From Zootoca vivipara (lineage: Eukaryota): DNA of 64,000 bases. Every line of letters starts with the position of its first letter. Position 1 is the first letter of the stretch. The notes under the pieces were generated by a model, which did no database searches, was not told where the DNA came from, and was given only the letters and a program-made list of their open reading frames with translations. Location: positions 50,530,001-50,594,000 of the forward strand of contig NC_083284.1 in NCBI RefSeq assembly GCF_963506605.1, written 5' to 3'. The position numbers and the translations under genes are program-made. Shown piece after piece: positions 11,095 to 47,375 of the stretch.

Positions 11095-12270
11095 AACCAT
11101 ATTTTTGCCATGTTTCTGTTGGTGTTCTATCTTTGTTGGTGTTTCCCTTCGTTATCTTCCTTCCAGGACCTTTGTTATGTTTACATATTCTTCCTTCAGA
11201 TAAGGATAGGCTTCTATTTTATCTTGGTTATTTTAATCACCACATAATTATCTCTGCCAATGGGAACATGGGCAGCGGATAACTTAGTCTGCCTTTTTCC
11301 TCTCTGGAAGTCCTGAGTACTGCTGAAATTTCTTCAGGAGTCACTCTGAGGTGTGGTGTCCATTTCTGGAAAAGAAGAAAACTATGATTCCAAAAAGCTA
11401 TGCTGCTTTTTCTTCTGGGAAGGATTTACATTGTCCCCTCCCCCATGGTAATAATAAGTGGGTGGATGTTTTTAAATGAAGCAAACATATTTGTAATATA
11501 CCTGTATCATAATGTTATTTTTGCATTGAAATAAATGCATTCTTTTTTTTGCAAAATATTATGCTAATTTTGAAACTTTTAAGGAATTATCGTAATTACT
11601 TCAAGTTTTATATTCTTAATTCTCATTTTAAAAGCAAGGTGGCATCACACAATTTGAATCTTCCTAGTTGAAAGTGTTTGTTGATCTAAGACTCTAAAGC
11701 ATGGACTCAATGAAATAATTTGTCCTTAAGCACTTAACCAGCAGTCCTGTTTCATGTTCCAGTATGATAACAAAAGTATGTATGCTTCATTTGTACACTA
11801 ACTGTCTCTTTTATTAAACATCTGATGCCTGTGTGCCCTTTTTCTCTGAAGTCCACTGATTAACTGATGATATCTTCACTTGTGCTCAAAGCCTAGGGGC
11901 AATTAACTGGTTAAAACTGTTTTCAGATCATGAAAAACATAACTGTTCGGGTTTTAGTTTTGGGATATGAACTGAGTGAGTTTCTTTGTATCATACATAG
12001 TATGTTTTGGGGGGTGAGGGTGGCTGTGATTCAGACAGATCAGCTTTGAATAATGTCATTAAAATCTGAGACATTAGTCACATTGTCATTTCCATATTAT
12101 AAATGTAATAAAATTATATGGGAGCAGTCATGTGTCTATGGATATTACAGTAACCAGAGTAGAATTCCTGCTTCTTTGGGTAGGAGAAGGCATTCTGGTT
12201 AGGGTGGTCGCATATACATCCTTTAAAAAGAGAAAATGCATCACCAAAGAAGAGCACATATCTGCATATA

Positions 12271-12509
12271 CCCTGTTTCTCCGAAAATAAGACGTAGCCA
12301 TAAAATAAGATGTAGCAGGATTTTAAGCATTCAAGGAATATAAGCCATACCCCGAAAATAAGACATAGTGATAGGCGCAGCAGCAATGCCGGCCGCGGCA
12401 GGAGGAGGAGGAGGGAAAAAAAATAATATATCCCCTGAAAATAAGCCATAGTCTGTTTTTTTGAGGAAAAATAAATATAAGATGGTGTCTTATTTTCAGA
12501 GAAACACGG
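12271..12509. mobile_element. Tc1/mariner superfamily (Tc2/pogo-like) MITE
   Basis: TA TSDs (12269-12270, 12510-12511), TIRs CCCTGTTTCTCCGAAAATAAGAC / GTCTTATTTTCAGAGAAACACGG, and internal repeats of AAAATAAG(A/C)C. Related to the element at 36965-43771 in the opposite orientation. Confidence 0.85.
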
Positions 12510-25980: not shown

Positions 25981-27646
25981 CTGGCGTTTGAAATGAGGTG
26001 GCTTTTTTTAACCCCTCAAGGGGTGAGGGGAGAGCTGGCGAAGGCACAGGCTTAACTTTGCAAGATCGCTCTGCCTGCCAGATGCTGTTGCAAGTAGCTG
26101 TTCTCTTGAGAGCGAGCCTATTGTCCTTAAGAAGCACTTTAAATTTCATTCCTGTGCGAGGATGGGGTTCCGTCTCCCTAGATTGAAATTCACAGCAATT
26201 CCTTTCGAGCTTTAGGAGTACCACGTTTCGCCATCCTTGCCTTTTGATGTAGCTCAGATTTTACGCAGGACTCCTCCAGGCTTTTGGACTTGATTAGTGC
26301 AAATCTACCGTGGCATTCTTAAAGGGCAGGGTATAAAATATTTCTAATTATGGAATCACCCGCTTGTGAGAATGGCAGACCTCATGTATGACATTGGTTA
26401 GCAGACTGGCTTTTCTTTAAAAACAAAGTCCATAACGACAGAGCTAACTTTATAACTGCAAATGTAGTGTAGTTTAAAACAGCATGAAAGCAGGCTGGTT
26501 TGATTTAGAAATAATTGTTAAATGTTTCCTGTAAACTCAGGATTACTCTTTGACATTTATTACGGTATCTGGAAAAAATAAGGCATATCAGAGTTTCTGT
26601 AAACAGTTGCAAATTCCAGTGCTTTTTATTTATAATTCTAGCTCCTTTTCTTTCATATAACTAATACATGATATACACAGAATATATGACTGTATTACAA
26701 AGTCATTCTGTGTTCTTAGAGCTTAATATAATCAAATTCATTGCCTAAAGATGGTGTAGTTGAAGATTTGATCCCTTTCCACTGAAGTGGAAATACTTTC
26801 AGTAATTGAAAGCAGATTCATGTCTGGGGTTCTACAAGCCAAGGTTTTCATTTTCAAAAATAAACCTTTTGTTCTCCAACTTTAAATGTTTGAGTGAAGC
26901 ATCCAGAGACCACTGTTTGCTTATTGTCTAATGTGGTAGTTATGAGCTATTGGAAATACTTTAAGGGAAATGTTTATTAGAATTCCACTTATTTTGGACA
27001 ATTCTTGGGTTTAGCTTCACTATACATATACAACATGTTAAAATACAGAATGTTTTTTTTTTGAATTCTGTTTTTTACATGCACATTCCATATTACATGC
27101 ACATTCTGTTTTTACATAAGCATACAGTGGTGGCAGTTAATATGTTTCTTCAGCCTTTAACTAATATAGCTAATACTTCAAGCTGATTTCATAATTGAGA
27201 TGCGGACTGGATCTTGAGGAACTTTGAAGGGATAGTGGTCTACCTCACCAAACAAACCTGGACAGCTGCTCTTTGTTAACTTGGTTTCTGTTTTCTGGCT
27301 ATCATCTTCAAAAAAATTCTTTCAAGAATGCTTTTAGTCAATTCAGGAATAGTTTGGTGGGAAATAGACGCTGCGGACCTTCAGGCAAAGAGGGATCTGC
27401 TACTGACCTGGTCAGAAATTTGGAAAGTAGAAGACAAGGGAAATAAATAGTAGGACTTGCCTTACCCTTGTAGGCCCTTTAAATAGCAAAATAAATTGAC
27501 TGAAGTTATGTGAGAAAAGTTCCCAAGCATTGGAACATCCAGCCCTGCATACATATCTGTATATATCTTGTACAGCATACACAGCATATCATTTGTATTG
27601 ATTGCCTGATGGAATGAGTCAGTGTTACCTTTTGATCTTTTTACAG

Positions 27647-34797: not shown

Positions 34798-35038
34798 NNN
34801 NNNNNNNNNNNNNNNNNNNNNNNNNNNNNNNNNNNNNNNNNNNNNNNNNNNNNNNNNNNNNNNNNNNNNNNNNNNNNNNNNNNNNNNNNNNNNNNNNNNN
34901 NNNNNNNNNNNNNNNNNNNNNNNNNNNNNNNNNNNNNNNNNNNNNNNNNNNNNNNNNNNNNNNNNNNNNNNNNNNNNNNNNNNNNNNNNNNNNNNNNNNN
35001 NNNNNNNNNNNNNNNNNNNNNNNNNNNNNNNNNNNNNN
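34798..35038. other. Assembly gap (N run)
   Basis: 241 N. Confidence 1.
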
Positions 35039-35786: not shown

Positions 35787-37032
35787 AAAGGACTGGCATT
35801 TCAACCTATAAAGTAATGAGTGAACAGTGAGCCCAGGTGATCTCACTCCACGGATGAAAACCATTATTCTTTATTACTAATTGATCAGACTGAGTATAAT
35901 AGAGCGTGAATTCTAGGCATACACTATCTGTAGGACAAACAAAGCTCTGGCCTTCAAAGGACTTGTACACACTATAAGGCTTTGTGATTTTAGTGCGGTA
36001 ATCTACAGTTACTTGCTTTAATTGTTTGCATGCTGGTAACTTTTATTGTTTAGTTATGTGCTAGAGTAAACAGCTGTTTTGTAAGATACAAAATGAGATA
36101 AAAATGATGCAGTTCCCCTTACCATATTGATCCAAATTTTGTCATAGACAATCAGTACTTCAGGATTCACTTGAATCCCAATTTATCATAGTTTGGGTGC
36201 GCACACATGTATGTATTACAGGCAATGGCCAATTTATGCATGTCCAATTGATGCGTGGCTGTGCATGCACACATCATGGCAACCCAGAAGTGGCTGGAAA
36301 AGGAGGTGGAACGGGCCGGGCCGGGGGCAGAAGCATAAGTGTAGCAGGGTGGAGTGGGCTTATGCGCGTTTCACTGTCACATGTGATGACCCAGAATGCA
36401 AGCCCCACATAAATCGAGGGTTGCCTATACAGTATTATCCCACCTTTCTTCAGTAGAACACAAGGCAGTGTATGTAATTTCCATGCATCAACACTGCTAA
36501 GGGAGTGTTGTCTGAATTAGGTACTGTACTGCAAATGAACAACAGCTGCATACCTCAAGTGTGAAAAAAGAAGGGTGGAGAATACCCTTGTCTGTAAAGA
36601 CTAATGAAAGTTGGTGTGAGGAAAAGCATGAAAACGAAAGTGAAATTCATTGGGGCAATGGTTTAGAAGAAAACGTTAAAAGCTGAGTCGGGCAACACTT
36701 TCTTATATTATGAAAGGATAAACCCCTATTGTAACTTTAGTGGAATATTGTTAAAATGTCATTGGCAATGAAAGAGTCTCAGAAGGGACCATCTATTTCC
36801 AAAGGCATTGAAAATGGCACCATGTAATATATTTGGCTGCAATAAGGAATGATTGAATGATGATCAGTGTAGCATTCTTTGGGTTGTATCCAGTGTTGTC
36901 TCTTGCACTGATGGATGGTTATTTGATCCAGAAAAGGCTTATGTCAGTGAAATAAGCACTGTTACCGTGTTTCTCACATTTTAAGACATGTCTTATATTT
37001 ATTTTTACTCAAGAAAATAAGCCTATGGCTTA

Positions 37033-37460
37033 TGTGAGGGACAGGGGATATCGCGAAGTCCCTCCCCTCCTGAGTTCAAGCCCATCCCCGAGCACAGGGG
37101 AAAGCAGAGGGAGCTCCGATTCCAGTGAGGAAGCAGGAAGTCGTGTCCGAGGCTCAGGCAAGGTAGCGGAGCCAGGGTCCCAGGTGGGACAGGAAGGGGC
37201 AAATAAGGGGGGGAGACCCATCCCCCCAACTCCGGAATTACAGAGAAAGAGGAGGGGAAAGAGGATGGGTCTGCCAAGGCTTTTGTGTTGGGGAAAGACG
37301 CGCCAAAAGCCATTCGGAGGTTCTGCAACGTAATGACCCCATCGTTCCGTGTAAATAGCAATGACTTCAGCACTGTAAATACGCAGCACCAATAAAAGAA
37401 TAAAATGCAGAGCTGCGTAGCGTCGTTACTCTGAAGTAGCCTGCTCCGGCCACTGTGACA
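37033..37460 (+). repeat. 5' LTR (428 bp)
   Basis: Matches the 3' LTR by eye except T37423 vs C42807; tandem AATAAA at 37391 and 37399. Confidence 0.97.
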
Positions 37461-37462
37461 GC

Positions 37463-37473
37463 AACCTCCGAAT
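37463..37473 (+). promoter_or_regulatory. Self-priming primer-binding site (non-tRNA)
   Basis: AACCTCCGAAT, 2 nt after the LTR, is the exact reverse complement of LTR 37312-37322 ATTCGGAGGTT. There is no TGG tRNA-type PBS. Confidence 0.8.
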
Positions 37474-37504
37474 CTTTTTTTTGGGCTACTTTGGAGTTGC
37501 CGGG

Positions 37505-38727
37505 ATGAGTGTGTCAGAGGCGGAGAAATGGCGGCAGATCGCGGAGAAAGCCCAGCAAGACCTGCAGCAGCTGGCGCAGCAGGCGCAGGGGGAATTAAAG
37601 GCAGCTAAAGAAGAAACCAAGAAGGTCCAGGACGACCGGCTACAACTTGCGGAACAGGTGAGAGCGCTCCAGGAAAGAGAGCAGCAATTAAGGGCGGTGG
37701 CGGTAGACCTCCAAAACAAGCTGGATGCAGAGAAAAACAAGGCGGGAGGGGCACCCCAAGTCCAAGTGCTGCCAGGAAGGAGAGCCGGGACCCTAGTAAG
37801 CAAGTTCAATGGAGACCCGAGGGAATATCATGGCTTTGAGACTGAGATTGTGTATGCTCTTGAGCTGCACCATGATGACTTCCCTGATGATGAGCACAGG
37901 GTAGCGTTTATTGTGGAGCACCTTACCGGGGCAGCCAGGGAGTGGCTAAGACCGTTAATCGCAACAAAGAATCCTTGCATGAAGAATGTCAAACTATTTC
38001 TAGAAGGTTTGAAAACGATGTATTCGTCCGATAGTCATATGGACCAGACTAAGGAGGAACTTCATAATTTACGCCAAGGAAATATGACAGTTCGCGCATA
38101 TTGGGCGAAATTCACCATGCTGGTGCACAGACTGGGGTGGGAACTAGAGTCAGCCCCAATGCAAGCGGCGTTCTACTTGGGTTTGCATGAGGAGGTGAAG
38201 GATGAACTCTCGAGAGGTCCAAAGCCCAGTAGTATGGATCAGCTGAGCAAAGCGGCTCTGGCGGTGGGGGTGAGACAGGAATCCCGATGGAGCGACAAGC
38301 AAGCAACGCGCGCAAAGCGGGCTTGGTTCCCACGGTCGCAGGAGAAGCCACTCCCCCAACAACCCTTTCAAGCCACGCCTGGGGCCAGCCAGGACCAGGA
38401 ACCCATGCAGATTGATAGCGCGCGCGGGCTTTTCAAACCCCAGCGGCGCCAAGACGCAAGGAGGGAAGGGGCGGGAATTGCTTTCTCTGCAACTCCCCCC
38501 AGCATCTCGTCAGAGACTGCCCACATCGCAGGGAGTGGCAAGGAAAGGCGGGAACGGTTGTGCCCTCCCCCACTGACGCAGCACCACAGCAGGGAAACGG
38601 GAAAGCCTGGCTGCAGGAGACAAGGGGCAGCAGCCAGGAACAGTCAGCAGACAACAGCCCCAGCCCGCCCACCCGCACAGAGAGGAGCAGAGCCAGCCCA
38701 CCCCTCCCAGAGCAGGAGTGGTTCTAG
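37505..38727 (+). pseudogene. gag (coiled-coil N-terminus, PEG10/RTL1-like capsid, CCHC knuckle), with one frameshift lesion
   Basis: MSVSEAEKW... coiled coil; KFNGDPREY...LTGAAREW; LRQGNMTVRAYWAKF; EPMQID. The zinc knuckle CFLCNSPQHLVRDC (38479-38520) lies in the -1 frame after a (GC)n tract at 38418-38426, and that frame stops at TAG 38725-38727. Confidence 0.88.
38592..38661 (+). promoter_or_regulatory. -1 programmed ribosomal frameshift signal (G GGA AAC + pseudoknot)
   Basis: Heptamer 38592-38598 correctly phased in the gag knuckle frame; 7-nt spacer; 9-bp stem CCTGGCTGC (38606-38614)/GCAGCCAGG (38630-38638); loop GGGGC complementary to GCCCC (38657-38661). pol is open in the -1 frame from this point. 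Confidence 0.85.
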
Positions 38728-41700
38728 AAGTCACGCTAACGCTCCCAAATGGCTATCCATTGACGGTCCTCGCCCTAATTGACAGTGGTGCCTCAGCCAA
38801 CTTCTTCTCGAGAACCTTTGCAGAAGAGCACCAGATCCAGCTTCTGCAGCTGGATTTTCCTCTGCACGTGGCAACCATTGACGGCAGAGAGTTGCTGGGA
38901 GGGGCCATCACTCATCAAACCCCCCCCCCCATGAGAATGACGGTGGGAAGGCACTCAGAGACACTGGCATTCAACGTCACCACCATCTCAGACCCCCCCA
39001 TCGTCTTGGGCATGAGCTGGCTGGCGCGCCACGACCCCTCCATCAGTTGGCACCAGAGATGCATCACTTTTGGATCGGACTTTTGCCTGGAACATTGCAT
39101 GCAGCACCAACCAGGGGAGGGGCCTCCGATAGCCACGGTGGCCACCATGCACGTCAAAGGGGGTGAGGCGATACCCAAGCCGTACTGGGACCTGCAGGAG
39201 GTCTTCAGCGAAGCGGAGTCCGACCACCTACCCCCGCACAGGCCTTTTGACTGCCAGATCAACCTGGTGCCAGGGGCAACTATACCCCCAGCCAAGCTGT
39301 ACGCCATGTCAGACCAGGAACTGGAGGATCTGCGCGCTTTCATCGACAAGAACCTCAAGCGGGGGTTCATCAGAGAAAGCAAGGCAGCAGGGGGCAGCCC
39401 GGTCTTCTGGGTGGACAAGAAAGACACGCAACAGCGCCGTCTTGTGGTGGATTTTAGACGGCTGAATTCAGTGACAGAGCCAGTGGCTTTCCCCATGCCC
39501 AGAGTGGATGATCTCCTGACAGCGGCACGCAGGGGTAAGATTTTCACCAAGCTAGACCTGAGGGGGGCGTACAACTTGATCAGGATCCGGGAAGGCGATG
39601 AATGGAAAACCACGATGTTCACGCCTCTGGGCTCTTTTGAATATCTGGTGATGCCCTTCGGGTTGCAAGGGGGCTCAGCATGCTTCCAGGCCTTCATGCA
39701 CCACGTCCTGGGGTCCCTCCTTTTCAAGAACTGCTTGGTCTTCCTAGATGACATCCTTATCTATTCCGCTGACCCAGTGCAGCATGTGAAAGACGTCAGG
39801 GAGGTGCTGCAGCGCCTGAAGGAGAACCACCTGTATGTGAAGCTGGAGAAGTGCAAGTTTCACACCAAAGAGGTGGACTTCCTGGGCTACAAGCTGTCAG
39901 ACAAGGGGTTAGCGATGGACAAGGACAAGGTGCAGGCCATCCTGGACTGGCACAGCCCCAGGACGCGCAAGGATGCCCAACGCCTACTAGGCTTCGCCAA
40001 CTTCTACAGGAAGTTCATCAAGAACTTCTCTCGCGTTACGGCTCCCATCACTGACTGCCTGAGAGGCAAGCAGAAGTTCAGGTGGACACCAGAGGCGCAA
40101 GCAGCGTTCGAAAGCCTCAAGAGGGTGTTCGCCTCGGACCAGAACCTGTTCCACGTGGTTCAGGACGCGCCCCTACGCGTTGAGACAGATGCTTCTGATA
40201 AAGCTGTGGGCGCCATTTTGTTGCAACTGGACGCCAACAGAGAGTGGAGACCCTGTGCCTTCTTCTCCAGGAAGTTGACCCAGCCAGAGCGAAACTACAC
40301 GGTGTTTGATAGGGAACTTCTTGCGATCCACGCTGCGTTCCAGCACTGGAGACACTTCCTGGTGGGCGCAAAGCACCCCATCCAGGTGTGCACAGACCAC
40401 AAGAACCTGGAGTTCTGGAGAAATGCCAGGGTGCTCAACCAGCGGCAGATACGGTGGGCAGAGTTCTTCTCGAACTTCAACTTCTCCATCCACTACATCC
40501 CGGGGGAGCAGAATGTCAGGGCGGATGCCCTCTCCCGCAAACCGGAGTACATGGAGGAGGAGGCGCCACCAGCACCCAGGCACATTTTCCCCCCGTCAGC
40601 ATGGTCCTGCGGAGCAGCAGTGGTGAGCGAGGCAGAACTCACAGCACTGACGGCAGCGGATGAGTTTGCCAACCGCATCTTCAGAGAACTGAGAGGGGGG
40701 AGGGAGCAGGCAAAAGACTTTGCAGAACGCAGGGGGCTGCTTTTCTACAAGGGTGCACTGTACCTGCCCACCACCCAGCTTAGACGTAAGGTCCTCAAGC
40801 AGATGCACGACAACCCAACTGCGGGGCATTTTGGAAGGGACAAGACCGCTCACCTAGTCATGAGACACTTCTGGTGGCCAGGGGTGCGGGAGGATGTCAG
40901 AGACTATGTAAGGGGCTGTGACACCTGCCAGCGGGCAAAGGTGGTCAGAGCAGCGCCAGCAGGATTGCTGGAGCCCTTAGCCACACCACACAGGCCATGG
41001 GAAGTGGTGTCCATGGACTTCATCACAGACCTGCCTTCTTCCAGGGGCAAGACCGCAGTGTTGGTGGTGGTGGACCTCATGTCCAAAATGTGCCACTTTA
41101 TACCGTGTGCCAGAGCGGTCTCTGCAGAAGAGACAGCCAAACTGTTTGTTGACCACGTATTCAGACTGCATGGCTTACCTTTAAGAGTTATTTCGGATAG
41201 AGGCCGCCAATTTGTGTCCAGGTTCTGGCGGCGGCTCATGAACCTCCTGCAGGTGGAGGTCAGCTTGTCGACGGCTAGACACCCGTAGACCAATGGACAG
41301 GCGGAGAGGGTCAACGCCATTCTGCAGCAGTACCTGAGATGCTACGTCAGCCAGAGGCAAACGGACTGGGTGGATCGCCTGCCACTGGCAGAATTTGCCT
41401 ACAACAATGCAGTGCACGTCTCCACAGGGGTGTCGCCCTTTAAGGCCAACTACGGGCGCGACCTCAGATCTTTCCCGGAGAGGGAGGGGGAGGAGGAGGA
41501 GGAGGGCCCGCAAGCTGAGGATTGGGCAGAGGAACTGGAGACGGTGCACCAGCAGCTCAGAGAACACTTGGAGAGAGCCAAGGAAGCATACAAGAAGGGG
41601 GCAGATCGCCACAGGCGACAGGGGGAGGTCATCAGGGTGGGGGACAAGGTTTGGCTGTCCTCGGAGGGCCTTCCCACCAGAGGGAGGTGCAAGAAACTGG

Positions 41701-42380
41701 CACCCAGAAGGTTGGGCCCCTTCACGGTCACGCAACAGGTCAACCCGGTGGCCTTCAGACTGGCACTGCCAGAGGACATGAGGGTGCACCCAGTGTTTCA
41801 TAGATCGCTGCTGTCGCCGTACAGGGAAAGCAGCAGGCTCCGAGACAGCGAACAAACCCCCGAGGGAGGGGGGGAGAGGGAAGGCAGGGAGCAACTCAAT
41901 GAGGCCACGGCCATCCTGGATTCACGGAGAGGGGTGGGGGGCCTGGAGTACCTCATGGCATGGGAGGATGCTCCGCAGTCCCAGAATGAATGGGTCCCGG
42001 CCACTCAGATACAGGAGGAATTCTTGGTGGAAGAATTTCACGCCCTCTATCCCCACAGACCCAAGCCCTGGCACATGGAAAGGGAGGGGGAGGAGGAGGA
42101 GGCACGGGAGAGCAGCTCACCATGGCGCTGGGAAGCGGAGTTTGAGGAACCGGGAGACGAGGTATGGGTGTCACCGAGATCCACCCAGTCAGAGGCAGAA
42201 GCAGATTGGCAGCACATTTTTACCCCCACCAGCTCGGACGCCACGGACTTTTTGGGATTCCAGTCCTCCCAGGCGGAAGGGGGGGGGCTCGCAGGACTGG
42301 GGGGAGGTGTTCACACCGACGGGCTCGGAAGGTACTGAGTTCTTAGGCTTCGAGTCGTCCCCGACACCTGGGGGGGACTT

Positions 42381-42416
42381 GGGGAGGGGAGAAGGAGAGC
42401 TTGGGAGGGGGGTGGA
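42381..42416 (+). promoter_or_regulatory. Polypurine tract
   Basis: GGGGAGGGGAGAAGGAGAG..GGGAGGGGGG immediately upstream of the 3' LTR. Confidence 0.8.
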
Positions 42417-42844
42417 TGTGAGGGACAGGGGATATCGCGAAGTCCCTCCCCTCCTGAGTTCAAGCCCATCCCCGAGCACAGGGGAAAGCAGAGGGAGCTC
42501 CGATTCCAGTGAGGAAGCAGGAAGTCGTGTCCGAGGCTCAGGCAAGGTAGCGGAGCCAGGGTCCCAGGTGGGACAGGAAGGGGCAAATAAGGGGGGGAGA
42601 CCCATCCCCCCAACTCCGGAATTACAGAGAAAGAGGAGGGGAAAGAGGATGGGTCTGCCAAGGCTTTTGTGTTGGGGAAAGACGCGCCAAAAGCCATTCG
42701 GAGGTTCTGCAACGTAATGACCCCATCGTTCCGTGTAAATAGCAATGACTTCAGCACTGTAAATACGCAGCACCAATAAAAGAATAAAATGCAGAGCTGC
42801 GTAGCGCCGTTACTCTGAAGTAGCCTGCTCCGGCCACTGTGACA
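42417..42844 (+). repeat. 3' LTR (428 bp)
   Basis: Matches the 5' LTR with one substitution; AATAAA at 42775 and 42783. Confidence 0.97.
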
Positions 42845-44429
42845 GCTTATTTTCGGGGGGTGTCTTATTTTATATTTTTTACTAACCAGTAAGTTGCTGC
42901 TGCTGCTCAAGCGCCAACAAAGCACCCAGCAGCGTGCGCCGCATGGAGCCCCGAGCCAGCGGGACCCGCTGAAGCGCCGACAAAGCTCCCGGCAGCGCTG
43001 CACAGAGCGCCCTGAGCCGCAGGAGGAGCACCGTGGCTCTCAGCCTCTCCGCCGTCCCGTTCCTGTCTCCGCCGCAGGCGCCGCCGCCTCCTGCTCCCTC
43101 CCGGGGCGTCCCAGGCTTCACCCGCTCAGCAGCACTCCATGCAAAGCCAGGGGCAAGTGCAATTCCACCAGGAGGTTCCCTCCGCGGCACCCATAGAGAC
43201 CATAGAGGAAAGGCGCGCGGCAGACACACCACTTCCGACTTCCATTACCCTCACCCACTCCTGCTGCGGCTCGGGGCGCTCTGCGCAGCGCTGCCGGGAG
43301 CTTTGTCAGCGCTTCAGCGGGTTCCATGCCAAGGGGAAAGGAAGGGAGGAGGGGAGAGAGAGCGGGCAGAAAGGGAGGAGGGGAATAATCGCTGGCGCTA
43401 CACGGCGAAAGAGAAAGGCAAGTTATGGCTCCACGTGGAGCGACTGTCCCTTCCAGTTTGCTGCTGCTGCACGCCACGAACAGCGGAGGGTGAAAGGAGC
43501 AGCGCCGGGTAGCCAGAGTAACCTCCACCACCCCACAGCCATGACGTTTCCCAGCACAGGACGATTGAGGCTTTGTCAGCGCTTCAGCTGGGTCCCGCTG
43601 GCTCGGGGCTCCACATGGCGCGCGCTGCTGGGTATTTTGGCGAGGCCCTCCAGAACTGCACTTACGGTAGCACTACGGCTTATTTTCGGGGTATGTCTTA
43701 TATTTTTTCAAAGCATGAAAATCGTGCCATGGCTTATTTTATAGGCACGTCTTAAAATGTGAGAAACACGGTATTGCTGATCTCACTTGTCCCCTGAAGC
43801 CCTTGCCTCTATGCCGTTCCAAAGGATCCTAACCCTTTAGTTTTGGGAATGTGCAGGGAGCTGCATGGAGAGGAAGAACTAGTGAAAATAATCTCCCAGT
43901 TCCATGGATGGATGTCTCCTCTAAAACAGCCATCTATCACAAAGAACACCATTGAATAGGATATTGTAGTTCTGCAAAGTTGTCCTTGGGTATCTGTATG
44001 TTTAAACTGGGTGGAATTTTACACACTTGAGTAATATTGACTTAAACTCACAGAGGATATGACAGAATTCACCTCAGTTTCTATAACCAACAGTGGTGTA
44101 CACTAAAAGTCAAAATGATTTGCAGTATGTTGAACTAGAATCATGGTACAAGCACTAAATGGTTTATTCAGACTGAAATCCTAATCCCACTTACCTGGGA
44201 GCAAGCCCCATTGGGTTCAGTAGTATTTACTTTTGAGTGGAGATGGTTAGGATTGCGCTGTAAGCAAATGTTGAAAGTCATTTGCTGGCTGGTGCACACT
44301 TCAGGAGCATGAGTGTATATGTGACAGTGTTGGATTTTTGCCCAACATGACAATCATTAATAAACAATTTTTCTTTTAAAATCATTCTCCATATGTGATA
44401 GAGGAATTCATAATTTACTTATTATTATA

Positions 44430-44653: not shown

Positions 44654-45063
44654 CGGGTGGCGCTGTGGTCTAAACCAAAGAGCCTAGGGCTTGCCGATCA
44701 GAAGGTCGGTGGTTCGAATCCCCACGACAGGGTGAGCTCCCATTGTTCGGTCCCAGCTCCTGCCCACCTAGCAGTTCGAAAGCACGTCAAGTGCAAGTAG
44801 ATAAATACCTTCCGTCGGGAAGGTAAATGGTGTTTCCGTGCACTGCTCTGGTTCACCAGAAGCAGCTTAGTCATGCTGGTCACATGACTGTCTGCGGACA
44901 AACACAGGCTCCCTAGACCTATAGAGCGAGATGAGCACCGCAACCCCAGAGTCGCCCGCAACTGGATCTAATGGTACAAGCACTAAATGGTTTATTCAGG
45001 CTGAAACCCTAATCCCACTTACCTGGGAGCAAGCCCCATTGGGTTCAGTTACCTTTACCTTTA
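44654..45063 (+). mobile_element. Sauria SINE (near full length) containing a 79-bp foreign insert
   Basis: tRNA head with A box GGTGGCGCTGTGG and B box GGTTCGAATCC; body CTAGCAGTTCGAAAGCAC...; BovB-like 3' GCAACCCCAGAGTCG; (ACCTTT)n tail; 11-bp TSD TATTTGTATGT (44643-44653, 45064-45074). Confidence 0.93.
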
Positions 45064-45189
45064 TATTTGTATGTGGATCTAGATTATGAGTGGAATTTCT
45101 GGGACCATGCTTATTTCAGATATGATCAGTATTTCTGGATAGAATTGTCAGATTTGTAGAAACGAGAAACATATTTCCATGCACTACAG

Positions 45190-45325
45190 CAGGCACCCCC
45201 AAACTTCGGCCCTCCAGATGTTTTGGACTACAATCCCCATCATCCCTGACCACTGGTCCTGTTAGCTAGGGATCATGGGAGTTGTAGGCCTAAACATCTG
45301 GAGGGCCGCAGTTTGGGGATGCCTG
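45190..45325. mobile_element. hAT (Charlie-like) palindromic MITE, 136 bp
   Basis: Same family as 2025-2160; TSD CACTACAG (45182-45189, 45326-45333). Confidence 0.92.
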
Positions 45326-46809: not shown

Positions 46810-47375
46810 TTCATCAGTTTGTCTTGGGAGACAATAGACGAGTGTGCCTTTGGGGGTGAAGACAAACTGTTGGAGAGTTACAGCGCCTGCTGTGGCTGTA
46901 GAGCAGGCATGGCCAACCTTGGCCCTTCAGCTGTTTTGGGACTACAATTCCCATCATCCCTGACCACTGGTCCTGTTAACTAGGGATGATGGGAGTTGTA
47001 GTCCCAAAACAGCTGGAGGGCCAAGTTTGGCCATGCCTGCTGTAGAGACTGATATGGGAGAGACATGTTTTGTTGCAGCTGGACAGATGAAGGCATCCAG
47101 TTGTGCTGCTGCACCATGGCATTTATTCTCTCTGCACTCCCCCCAGCAGTCATTTCTTCTCTGGTCACTGCTGTGGGTGCACAACCTGACTATCTGGGTC
47201 CAGGAACTTCAATCATTTGCAGAGGAATCTCACATGGCAGGGTTGGTGTTACCAGCCTTCATGTCAAGTTTGCAGACATCTTTGTAATGCAGAGTTGGTT
47301 TTCCAAGAGGCCTAGCACTTGAAGCCAGCTCCTTGTAGAGCATGTCCTTGGGGATTCTGCCATATTCCATGCCTT
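46810..47375 (-). mobile_element. RTE-clade LINE (non-BovB) 3' fragment, degenerate
   Basis: Minus strand translates MEYGRIPKDMLYKELASSARPLGKPTLHYKDVCKLDMK and a terminal zinc-finger-like FICPSCNKTCLSHISLYSHSRRC, split by a MITE. Confidence 0.85.
46904..47039. mobile_element. hAT palindromic MITE (related subfamily) nested in the RTE fragment
   Basis: TIR CAGGCATGGCCAA / TTGGCCATGCCTG; TSD CTGTAGAG (46896-46903, 47040-47047). Confidence 0.92.

What the first reader, a model, noticed from the sequence alone, without database searches (positions are those of the whole stretch)
42204..42360. Integrase tail carries two tandem IF-linker-FxGF motifs resembling LEDGF/TFIIS-N-domain interaction motifs: candidate new integration-targeting system
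Seen: after the chromodomain, pol encodes DWQHIFTPTSSDATDFLGFQSS (42204-) and, 91 nt later (a 30-aa unit plus one extra G in the G9 run), DWGEVFTPTGSEGTEFLGFESS. The copies are conserved in protein but not DNA. FTPT is TTT ACC CCC ACC vs TTC ACA CCG ACG (4/4 third positions differ), and FLGF is TTT TTG GGA TTC vs TTC TTA GGC TTC (3/4 differ), which points to purifying selection on the peptide. Established, recalled from memory: the IBM/TIM motif by which JPO2/CDCA7L, IWS1, MLL1 and the domesticated transposase PogZ bind the integrase-binding domain of LEDGF/p75 and other TFIIS N-terminal domains is a short helix, often ending in I-F, then an acidic phospho-Ser linker, then FxGF. Lentiviral integrase uses the same LEDGF pocket through a different surface. 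Inference: this chromovirus integrase may mimic a TIM to tether to LEDGF/HRP2 or elongation factors and so integrate into transcribed gene bodies. That fits this copy lying about 11 kb downstream of a CpG-island promoter. I do not know of this being described for vertebrate Gypsy elements, but cannot check the literature.
Basis: partly seen in the sequence, partly recalled or inferred. Interest (0 to 1): 0.88.

Follow-up and report, generated by a model that had tools for sequence, protein, structure and literature searches.

The report
LEDGF-type docking motifs in lizard retrotransposon integrase
A young Ty3/Gypsy retrotransposon in this (probably lizard) genome has, in the floppy tail of its integrase, two copies of a short peptide that closely resembles the motif cellular proteins use to dock onto the chromatin reader LEDGF/HRP2; the peptide is kept in all of the element's relatives, whose usual histone-reading pocket is degenerate, so it is probably a new way of steering integration, though binding is untested.

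Summary
The window holds a 5.8-kb Ty3/Gypsy chromovirus (LTRs 427/428 identical, 5-bp target-site duplication). Downstream of its chromodomain it encodes DWQHIF-9 aa-FLGF (42204-42260) and DWGEVF-9 aa-FLGF (42295-42351). Between the two copies synonymous sites are saturated (pS 0.79) and pN is 0.20.

New evidence:
- Every relative in a strongly supported lacertid clade (Podarcis, Zootoca) whose sequence reaches the tail keeps one or two copies of [W/F]xxxF, an 8-9-residue D/E/S/T linker and FxGF. The rest of the tail diverges.
- A separate Anolis Gypsy lineage without a chromodomain has the same motif.
- The clade's chromodomain lacks a complete aromatic methyl-lysine cage in 18 of 18 members. 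172 of 196 other chromoviral integrases have a full triad.
- AlphaFold2 predicts a short helix followed by disorder, as described for TIM/IBM motifs.
- I found no report of this in the searchable literature.

Caveats:
- Binding to LEDGF/HRP2 or any other TFIIS N-terminal domain is untested.
- Motif 2 is out of frame in this copy, and the integrase core carries an in-frame stop.
- The "gene-body" context rests on a single insertion. That insertion also abuts a CpG-rich block.

Verdict: a real, selected short linear motif and a credible new integrase-tethering variant. Its mechanism is inferred, not shown.

The parts
37028..37032 (+). 5' target-site duplication GCTTA
   Evidence: Same 5 bases at 42845-42849.
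37033..37460 (+). 5' LTR (428 nt, TG...CA)
   Evidence: 427/428 identical to the 3' LTR; single mismatch at 37423/42807.
37481..38782 (+). gag ORF
   Evidence: Pfam Retrotrans_gag E=3.7e-16 and Ty3_capsid E=1.1e-11.
38718..41285 (+). pol, first piece: protease, RT, RNase H, integrase zinc finger and catalytic core
   Evidence: Pfam RVP_2, RVT_1, RT_RNaseH, Integrase_H2C2 and rve. +1 frame relative to gag.
41286..41288 (+). in-frame stop codon inside the integrase core (this copy is broken here)
   Evidence: Translation reads ...STARHP*TNGQAERVN.
41289..42335 (+). pol, second piece, same frame: end of integrase core, SH3-like domain (41640-41825), chromodomain (41904-42041), then the tail with motif copy 1
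   Evidence: Pfam SH3_Tf2-1 E=2.9e-19 and Chromo E=1.3e-6. Translation.
41904..42041 (+). chromodomain with a degenerate aromatic cage (N / W / A at the HP1 Y24 / W45 / Y48 positions)
   Evidence: Alignment to HP1 chromodomain structures 1KNA/6ASZ. Clade-wide comparison.
42120..42176 (+). degenerate older motif copy (PWRWEAEFEEPGDEVWVSP): helix-like WxxxF and acidic linker kept, FxGF replaced by VWVS
   Evidence: Occupies the position of copy 1 in Podarcis relatives and resembles the DWSEEEVDEVVSF stretch of P0002.
42204..42260 (+). motif copy 1, DWQHIF-TPTSSDATD-FLGF, in the pol frame
   Evidence: Aligns with the conserved WxxVF...FxGF column block of relatives.
42261..42294 (+). interval that contains the frame break between copy 1 and copy 2; holds the G9 homopolymer 42279-42287
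   Evidence: Copy 1 is in frame 0 and copy 2 in frame +1. Relatives read both copies in one ORF. G9 coordinates.
42295..42351 (+). motif copy 2, DWGEVF-TPTGSEGTE-FLGF, in the +1 frame
   Evidence: BLASTP to the P0002 motif gives E=3e-4.
42361..42416 (+). polypurine tract region, translated in the +1 frame as a G/E-rich stretch
   Evidence: Purine-rich run abutting the 3' LTR. Relatives have GGGEGGPGGE at the same place.
42417..42844 (+). 3' LTR; its first ~100 codons (42417-42714, stop 42715-42717) continue the +1-frame pol tail, ending in a basic stretch plus LLCWGK
   Evidence: The C-terminus matches P0001 ...LGVKQLLCWKRFKRRPLSDSAS with E=1e-4. The same ending occurs in P0002, P0342 and P0343.
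42845..42849 (+). 3' target-site duplication GCTTA

Best explanation
The two peptides are copies of a functional short linear motif in the intrinsically disordered C-terminal tail of the integrase of a squamate (lacertid-type) Ty3/Gypsy chromovirus lineage. Each copy has a short amphipathic helix with aromatic anchors ([W/F]-x-x-x-F), an 8-9-residue acidic or phosphorylatable linker, and FxGF. This is the bipartite architecture of the cellular IBM/TIM motifs that dock onto the TFIIS-N-terminal-type domain (the 'integrase-binding domain') of the H3K36me3 readers LEDGF/p75 and HRP2. The most likely mechanism is mimicry of a host motif. In this lineage the tail motif seems to have taken over from the chromodomain, whose methyl-lysine cage is degenerate. 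Shown here: the motif exists, it is selected at the protein level, it is clade-wide, it lies in predicted disorder with a predicted helix, and it coincides with cage loss. Inferred only: the binding partner and any effect on target choice.
For: Architecture matches the published definitions. TIMs have an obligate helix and acidic linker of 8-16 residues rich in D/E/G/S/T, plus an FxGF that is essential for every known LEDGF/HRP2 partner (PMC9987994). The consensus is (S/E)xFxGF, and the DPF3a IBM peptide LF-GSTSESDTST-FHGF is lost on either F>A (PMC7337902). MLL1 has helix anchors F129/F133 (i, i+4), a linker, then F148-L-G-F151 (PMC8022399). JIL-1 DFxGFDE binds the LEDGF domain of the fly homologue, so the mode is old (10.1101/624023). 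Here the linker between the helix F and FxGF is 8 or 9 residues in 27 of 29 distinct instances. G and the last F are invariant, the first position is F in 23 of 29 (L or M in the rest), position -2 is mostly S/E/T and position -4 mostly E/S/D. Conservation: all clade members that reach the tail keep at least one copy, across about 1 substitution per site of pol divergence, while the surrounding tail is barely alignable. Within 90% clusters the variable residue is the 'x' of FxGF. Between the window's copies pS=0.79 and pN=0.20. The motif recurs in an Anolis Gypsy lineage that has no chromodomain, and the tree needs at least 2 changes of the trait. A complete aromatic cage is absent in 18/18 clade members, against a full triad in 172/196 others. 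AF2 gives SH3 and chromodomain pLDDT >90, a tail mostly below 55, and a helix on LERFWEEQF.
Against: No binding data of any kind, and complex prediction was not possible with the tools. In the window's own copies position -2 is T, not the S/E of described IBMs. Sequence searches of the peptides against PDB chains did not retrieve IBM-containing entries, although this is expected for motifs this short. Acidic-aromatic peptides are promiscuous, and WxxI/V also fits LC3-interacting motifs. This copy cannot express motif 2 in frame and has a stop in the integrase core. The only insertion available abuts a CpG-rich block rather than lying in an obvious gene body. Anolis P0351-type elements carry NLGF (first Phe lost) at the same place together with an intact cage, so the motif is dispensable in some lineages.
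Confidence: 0.5

Rival explanations
1. The motif is a functional docking peptide, but for a partner other than LEDGF/HRP2. Candidates are another TND protein of the elongation machinery (TFIIS, Elongin A, IWS1, MED26, PPP1R10), a histone chaperone-like contact with H2A-H2B or H3-H4, an LC3/ATG8 pocket (WxxI/V core), a Mediator or TFIIH acidic-activator pocket, or an import or capsid FG-binding site.
For: TIMs bind several TNDs through the helix alone. The helix part (W-x-x-[VI]-F preceded by acidic residues) also fits other acidic-aromatic motif classes (sequence; motif classes are my own knowledge). The tail is disordered.
Against: The most strictly conserved part is FxGF at a fixed 8-9-residue distance from the helix Phe. 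The literature ties this specifically to LEDGF/HRP2 partners. The alternative motif classes do not require FxGF, and several instances lack the W or the I/V needed for an LC3-type core.
Confidence: 0.27
2. The motif acts within the element: it folds back on the degenerate chromodomain or SH3-like domain, mediates integrase multimerisation or contact with Gag or capsid, or regulates integrase stability or processing. It would not be a host tether.
For: It always lies directly after the chromodomain, which has lost its histone cage. Two copies could bridge subunits.
Against: AF2 shows no confident packing of the tail on the folded domains; tail pLDDT is mostly below 55. The same motif occurs in an Anolis lineage with no chromodomain at all. 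Copy number varies from 1 to 2, and spacing from the chromodomain ranges from 10 to about 55 residues.
Confidence: 0.12
3. No peptide function. The similarity would be a chance by-product of an acidic low-complexity tail and a tandem duplication, or the conservation would reflect a nucleic-acid signal next to the polypurine tract.
For: Bare FxGF is frequent: 16 hits in the six-frame translation. Motif 2 lies only ~10-60 nt upstream of the polypurine tract and is out of frame here.
Against: Synonymous positions are saturated between the copies while the residues are kept. The motif is retained across a deep clade and in a second lineage while flanks diverge. Copy 1 in relatives lies well away from the polypurine tract, directly after the chromodomain. 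Relatives translate both copies in one ORF.
Confidence: 0.04

Closest known systems
Cellular IBD-binding motifs / TND-interacting motifs (JPO2/CDCA7L, PogZ, MLL1, IWS1, ASK, MED1, DPF3a; fly JIL-1); ELM class LIG_LEDGF_IBM_1
   Same: Bipartite helix, acidic S/T-rich linker and FxGF in a disordered region. Both Phe, the Gly and an S/E/T at -2 are conserved. The linker length is within the published 8-16 range.
   Different: Here the motif sits on a retrotransposon integrase rather than a cellular regulator, and usually in two tandem copies. The window's copies have T at -2. Binding is untested. PogZ is a domesticated transposase, but it is a host gene and not a mobile element.
Lentiviral integrase-LEDGF/p75 tethering (HIV-1)
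   Same: A retroelement integrase proposed to use the IBD of LEDGF/HRP2 to choose chromatin for integration.
   Different: HIV uses the folded catalytic-core dimer interface and N-terminal domain, not a linear FxGF peptide. The element here would copy the cellular ligands. Published work reports the LEDGF interaction as lentivirus-specific (reference 79 cited), and a 2023 paper states there are no data for LTR-transposon integrases binding fly LEDGF (PMC10018349).
Integrase C-terminal tail tethers: MLV IN tail-BET ET domain, Ty5 IN targeting domain-Sir4, Ty1 IN C-terminus-AC40
   Same: A short peptide at the integrase C-terminus binds a host chromatin or transcription protein and dictates target choice (Ty1: PMC7459421, listed; the others are my own knowledge).
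   Different: Different peptide, different proposed partner, different host clade. None of these uses FxGF.
Chromoviruses with canonical (group I) and non-canonical (group II, plant CRM-type) chromodomains
   Same: Ty3/Gypsy order gag-PR-RT-RH-IN with a chromodomain after the SH3-like domain. As in group II chromodomains, the first and third cage aromatics are missing (the group definition is my own knowledge of Gao et al. 2008).
   Different: This is a vertebrate lineage. Cage loss is coupled to a conserved FxGF tail motif, which has not been described for plant group II elements.

Membership tests
IBM / TIM (LEDGF/HRP2 IBD-binding short linear motif) | FxGF with both phenylalanines | tested here: met
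   FLGF in both window copies. The first position is F in 23 of 29 distinct family instances (L or M in the rest), and G and the last F are invariant.
IBM / TIM (LEDGF/HRP2 IBD-binding short linear motif) | Acidic or phosphorylatable residues before FxGF: (S/E)xFxGF, D/ExExFxGF | tested here: met
   The window has D-A-T-D-FLGF and E-G-T-E-FLGF, with D/E at -4 and T at -2. Relatives have mostly E, S or T at -2 and mostly E, S or D at -4. Caveat: T at -2 is not among the described S/E.
IBM / TIM (LEDGF/HRP2 IBD-binding short linear motif) | Flexible acidic linker of 8-16 residues between helix and FxGF | tested here: met
   8 residues in 15 and 9 residues in 12 of 29 distinct instances, rich in D/E/S/T.
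IBM / TIM (LEDGF/HRP2 IBD-binding short linear motif) | Short alpha-helix with hydrophobic anchors upstream | tested here: inconclusive
   The aromatic/hydrophobic i, i+3/i+4 pattern is conserved. AF2 predicts a helix for copy 1 of P0001 (residues 277-285, pLDDT 71-91) but only three helical residues for copy 2. This is a prediction for a relative, not for the window's peptide.
IBM / TIM (LEDGF/HRP2 IBD-binding short linear motif) | Lies in an intrinsically disordered region | tested here: met
   Tail pLDDT is mostly below 55 from residue ~290 of P0001, while the neighbouring domains exceed 90. No Pfam domain in the tail.
IBM / TIM (LEDGF/HRP2 IBD-binding short linear motif) | Direct binding to the IBD/TND that is lost on Phe>Ala and enhanced by CK2 phosphorylation | not testable with these tools
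   No complex prediction or wet assay was available. This is the decisive missing test.
Ty3/Gypsy chromovirus (Metaviridae) | LTRs with TG..CA ends, target-site duplication, gag, PR-RT-RH-IN order | tested here: met
Ty3/Gypsy chromovirus (Metaviridae) | Chromodomain at the integrase C-terminus | tested here: met
   Pfam Chromo E=1.3e-6. HP1/CBX structures matched with E down to 9e-5.
Canonical (methyl-lysine-reading) chromodomain | Three-residue aromatic cage (HP1 Y24, W45, Y48) | tested here: not met
   The window has N, W, A at these positions. 0 of 18 clade members have the full triad, against 172 of 196 other chromoviral integrases.

The most novel reading that the evidence does not exclude
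A vertebrate Ty3/Gypsy lineage has converged on the lentiviral strategy of using LEDGF/HRP2 to place its DNA. It would do so by copying the host's own linear IBM/TIM ligand in tandem on the integrase tail, and this tether would have functionally replaced histone reading by the chromodomain. A second, chromodomain-less squamate Gypsy lineage would have acquired or retained the same device. This would be the first retrotransposon, and the first non-lentiviral retroelement, shown to target through a TFIIS-N-terminal-type domain.
Probability: 0.4. Interest if true: 0.85.

Novelty: new variant of a known kind. Interest (0 to 1): 0.74.

Why it matters
How LTR retrotransposons of vertebrates choose integration sites is largely unknown. 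The only well-worked models are yeast Ty1/Ty3/Ty5/Tf1 and the retroviruses. A conserved, sequence-defined docking peptide gives a directly testable hypothesis: peptide binding, Phe mutants, and insertion-site profiles in lacertid genomes. If it holds, host-motif mimicry of the LEDGF/HRP2 interactome would extend beyond lentiviruses. It would also give a natural example of a chromodomain reader being replaced by a linear-motif tether, and would suggest small portable peptides for steering integrases. If binding fails, the motif is still a clade-wide, selected integrase-tail element that needs a partner.

Tried and rejected
- PDB sequence searches with each peptide and with a two-row profile gave only chance hits (WD40 repeats, RexA). 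HMMER cannot see motifs this short, so this says nothing about IBM membership.
- Two primary papers with IBM/TIM alignments (PMC6065015, PMC8943916) and Tesina 2015 are not held. Motif definitions were taken from the review and secondary papers instead.
The DNA of relatives, their LTR boundaries and their insertion sites could therefore not be examined, and codon-level tests across the family could not be run.
- Rfam found nothing in the window.
- Pfam on ORFs around the CpG-rich blocks found nothing, so the host gene was not identified.
- I considered and rejected a nucleic-acid (polypurine-tract-adjacent) constraint and pure chance.
- I considered a programmed frame change at the G9 run. Relatives read both motifs in one ORF, so a private indel or a homopolymer assembly error is more likely. 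I did not resolve this.
All comparisons are between natural sequences.
- No contig was taken for human, no spliced model was used, and the N stretches (20242-20402, 34798-35038) were left alone.

Full report
WHAT IS THERE

The finding lies in the 3' end of a complete LTR retrotransposon at 37033-42844. Its two 428-nt LTRs (TG...CA) differ at one base (37423/42807) and are flanked by a 5-bp target-site duplication, GCTTA. Pfam finds gag (Retrotrans_gag, Ty3_capsid). It then finds protease, reverse transcriptase, RNase H, the H2C2 zinc finger, the integrase core, the Tf2-type SH3-like domain and a chromodomain, in the Ty3/Gypsy order. The element is therefore a chromovirus and a very recent insertion.

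This copy is broken in two places:
- An in-frame stop at 41286-41288 lies inside the integrase core.
- There is a change of frame somewhere in 42261-42294. This interval contains a G9 run at 42279-42287.

I describe these breaks only. No mended or consensus version was made.

THE OBSERVATION

Downstream of the chromodomain (41904-42041) the pol frame reads DWQHIFTPTSSDATDFLGFQSS (42204-42269).

The 22-codon units share 14 residues but only 44 of 66 bases. Nei-Gojobori counting gives 11.5 synonymous differences in 14.5 sites (pS 0.79, saturated) and 10.5 non-synonymous differences in 51.5 sites (pN 0.20). The duplication is therefore old, and the peptides have been kept by selection on the protein.

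A third, older and degenerate copy (PWRWEAEFEEPGDEVWVSP, 42120-42176) keeps the helix-like part and the acidic linker but has lost FxGF.

Bare FxGF is common, with 16 hits in the six-frame translation, so on its own it means little. The bipartite form is what matters.

WHICH FRAME IS REAL

In this copy the pol frame stops at 42336-42338, inside motif 2. The +1 frame continues through the polypurine tract and about 100 codons into the 3' LTR, to a stop at 42715-42717. It ends ...RKRRGKRMGLPRLLCWGKTRQKPFGGSAT.

Relatives read both motif copies in a single ORF. They continue through a G/E-rich stretch and VDVRE (the LTR start), and those whose sequences reach the C-terminus (P0001, P0002, P0342, P0343) end in ...LLCWKR.... 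BLASTP of the window's +1-frame piece matches the P0001 C-terminus (E=1e-4) and the P0002 motif (E=3e-4), collinearly.

So the family's integrase tail includes both motifs and an LTR-encoded end. The window copy carries either a private frame break or a homopolymer assembly error.

CONSERVATION IN RELATIVES

An exhaustive profile-free search, two word-indexed searches with the integrase C-terminus and a clade alignment and one with PR-RT-IN gave 494 related proteins.

The nearest relatives are 60-70% identical in PR-RT-IN. All the named ones come from lacertid lizards: Podarcis muralis, P. lilfordi and Zootoca vivipara. Two unnamed contigs (P0001, P0002) also belong here. The next relatives are at most 50% identical.

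On an IQ-TREE tree the window and the Podarcis sequences form a clade with SH-aLRT 100 on a long stem (0.73). A deep internal split gives paths of about 1 substitution per site.

Every clade member whose sequence reaches past the chromodomain has one or two copies of the same bipartite peptide. Examples:
- RFWEEQF-ATTDEEEED-FVGF and RWEAVF-ESTDDDSSS-FRGF in P0001
- FFEQVF-GPTDDEED-FKGF and GWGNVF-EDTEDEDEI-FLGF in P0155
- QWKTVF-ESDENEDTD-FLGF in P0002
- DDWLF-TPTLSAST-F[QHR]GF in nine P0003-type representatives

.

Over 29 distinct instances:
- G and the last F are invariant.
- The first position is F in 23 instances and L or M in the rest.
- The spacer from the upstream F is 8 residues in 15 instances and 9 in 12.
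- Position -2 is mostly S, E or T, and position -4 mostly E, S or D.
- An aromatic residue lies four or five residues before the helix F.

The rest of the tail is barely alignable. Within 90% clusters the residue that varies is the 'x' of FxGF.

The regex F-x(8,9)-F-x-G-F hits 57 times in 384,920 residues. 54 of those hits are in these integrase tails.

A SECOND LINEAGE

An Anolis carolinensis Gypsy family (P0445, a 46-member cluster) has RLRD[IL]F-AEP[ST]DE[DE]S-F[EK]GF in its integrase tail. All 13 listed members that reach the tail have it. This family has no chromodomain at all (Pfam). On the tree it lies outside the lacertid clade, so the trait needs at least two changes.

Anolis P0351-type chromoviruses have DEEENLGFP at the equivalent place, which may be a relic with the first Phe lost.

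THE CHROMODOMAIN HAS LOST ITS CAGE

I aligned the window's chromodomain to HP1 structures 1KNA/6ASZ. N, W and A fall at the positions of the HP1 methyl-lysine cage residues Y24, W45 and Y48 (the residue numbering is established knowledge).

In a MAFFT alignment of 214 integrase C-termini, none of the 18 clade members has the full aromatic triad, and the P0003 group has also lost the W. By contrast, 172 of 196 other chromoviral integrases have [YFW]-W-[YFW]. These include the sister snake and Podarcis P0352 lineages.

Gain of the tail motif and loss of the histone-reading pocket therefore coincide on the same stem branch. This is a correlation, not proof of replacement.

STRUCTURE PREDICTION

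I ran AlphaFold2 on P0001 with a 62-sequence alignment.
- The SH3-like domain and the chromodomain have pLDDT above 90.
- From about residue 290 the tail is mostly below 55, that is, disordered.
- A helix is predicted at 277-285 (LERFWEEQF, the first half of copy 1).
- Three helical residues are predicted at the start of copy 2.
- There is no confident packing of the tail on the folded domains.

This is what is described for TIMs, but it is a prediction for a relative.

COMPARISON WITH WHAT IS KNOWN

The TND review defines TIMs by an obligate alpha-helix anchored by F/V/L/I, an acidic linker of 8-16 residues rich in D/E/G and phosphorylatable S/T, and an optional FxGF. The FxGF is present and essential in all known LEDGF and HRP2 partners (PMC9987994). 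Other published points:
- The IBM consensus is given as (S/E)xFxGF. The DPF3a peptide LFGSTSESDTSTFHGFDEDD loses binding on either F>A and gains affinity on phosphorylation at -2 (PMC7337902).
- A second paper gives the consensus as D/ExExFxGF. MLL1 uses helix residues F129 and F133, then F148-L-G-F151 (PMC8022399).
- CK2 phosphorylation of the linker tunes affinity (PMC7220354).
- Fly JIL-1 uses DFxGFDE on the LEDGF domain of JASPer.
- ELM lists the class LIG_LEDGF_IBM_1 as 'a bipartite motif'.

The lizard peptides meet every sequence-level criterion I could test. The one caveat is that the window's two copies have T, not S or E, at -2.

I found no paper linking FxGF, IBM or TIM motifs to retrotransposon integrases. 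A 2023 study of fly transposon insertions explicitly says there are no data for LEDGF-LTR-integrase interaction (PMC10018349). The library does not hold most subscription journals, so 'not described' is provisional.

MECHANISM AND ITS LIMITS

The best-supported reading is host-motif mimicry. The disordered integrase tail would present one or two IBM-type ligands to the IBD/TND of LEDGF or HRP2, whose PWWP domain reads H3K36me2/3, and this would bias integration.

What is shown:
- the existence of the motif;
- selection on the peptide;
- its distribution across the clade;
- predicted disorder and a predicted helix;
- loss of the aromatic cage.

What is inferred: the partner and the consequence. 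I put this reading at 0.5.

Rivals:
- A different partner for an acidic-aromatic peptide: another TND, histones, an LC3-type pocket, or activator-binding pockets (0.27).
- A role within the element itself (0.12).
- No peptide function (0.04).

THE GENOMIC CONTEXT CLAIM

A CpG island does lie at about 25400-26100 (GC 0.57, o/e 0.82), 11 kb upstream. However, an 850-bp CpG-rich block (42845-43700, GC 0.62, o/e 0.77) starts at the 3' target-site duplication itself. This block contains internal inverted repeats and could be another repeat rather than a promoter. No host gene was identified. One insertion of unknown transcriptional context says nothing about targeting.

- Complex prediction with a TND was not possible.
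- I used pairwise and column-wise comparisons of natural sequences instead.
- A mobilisation assay would need an active element and is referred.

VERDICT

I rate it a new variant of a known kind, namely integrase-tail tethering and LEDGF-ligand mimicry. Interest 0.74.

Noticed in passing
window 42361-42717 (and 37025-37333 in the 5' LTR): The family's pol ORF runs through the polypurine tract and about 100 codons into the 3' LTR. It ends in a basic stretch plus LLCW[KG][KR], which is shared with Podarcis relatives. The LTR's first bases encode the conserved VDVR. This part of the U3 region is therefore both coding and regulatory.
   Followed up: partly
window 41904-42041: The chromodomain lacks two of the three aromatic cage residues (N/W/A). 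The whole lacertid clade lacks a full cage, and one subgroup has also lost the tryptophan.
   Followed up: yes
window 41286-41288 and 42261-42294: The LTRs are 427/428 identical, yet the copy has an in-frame stop in the integrase core and a frame break near a G9 run. It is either a dead-on-arrival copy from a defective transcript or contains assembly errors at the homopolymer.
   Followed up: partly
window 38718-38782: gag and pol overlap by 64 nt, and pol is in the +1 frame relative to gag, as in yeast Ty3. I did not check whether relatives share this or whether it is another private indel.
   Followed up: no
window 42845-43700: An 850-bp CpG-rich block (GC 0.62, CpG o/e 0.77) begins exactly at the 3' target-site duplication. 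It has internal inverted repeats (42961-43028 with 43258-43325; 42918-42986 with 43570-43639). It could be a promoter island or a GC-rich repeat; this is undetermined.
   Followed up: partly
window 25400-26100: A CpG island (GC 0.57, o/e 0.82). An ATG-less ORF at 25805-25960 contains a leucine-rich hydrophobic run like a signal peptide and may be the first exon of a host gene on the + strand.
   Followed up: no
window 44143-44234 / 44971-45062 and 45185-45294 / 46899-47008; also 43668-43781 vs 12260-12373: Short dispersed direct repeats (82-92% identical), probably SINE-like host repeats. The retrotransposon's flanks (36946-36993 and ~43743-43787) also resemble each other.
   Followed up: no
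proteins P0351, P0162-P0165 (Anolis carolinensis): An abundant Anolis chromovirus family (366-member cluster) with an intact aromatic cage carries DEEENLGFP at the tail position where the lacertid clade has acidic-FxGF. This may be a relic or a weaker variant of the motif.
   Followed up: partly
proteins P0004, P0007, P0018, P0458: Several database 'host' proteins (a vomeronasal receptor, TM9SF2, an OGFR-like protein) are chimeric gene models that have swallowed Gypsy integrase fragments. They are annotation artefacts worth flagging.
   Followed up: no
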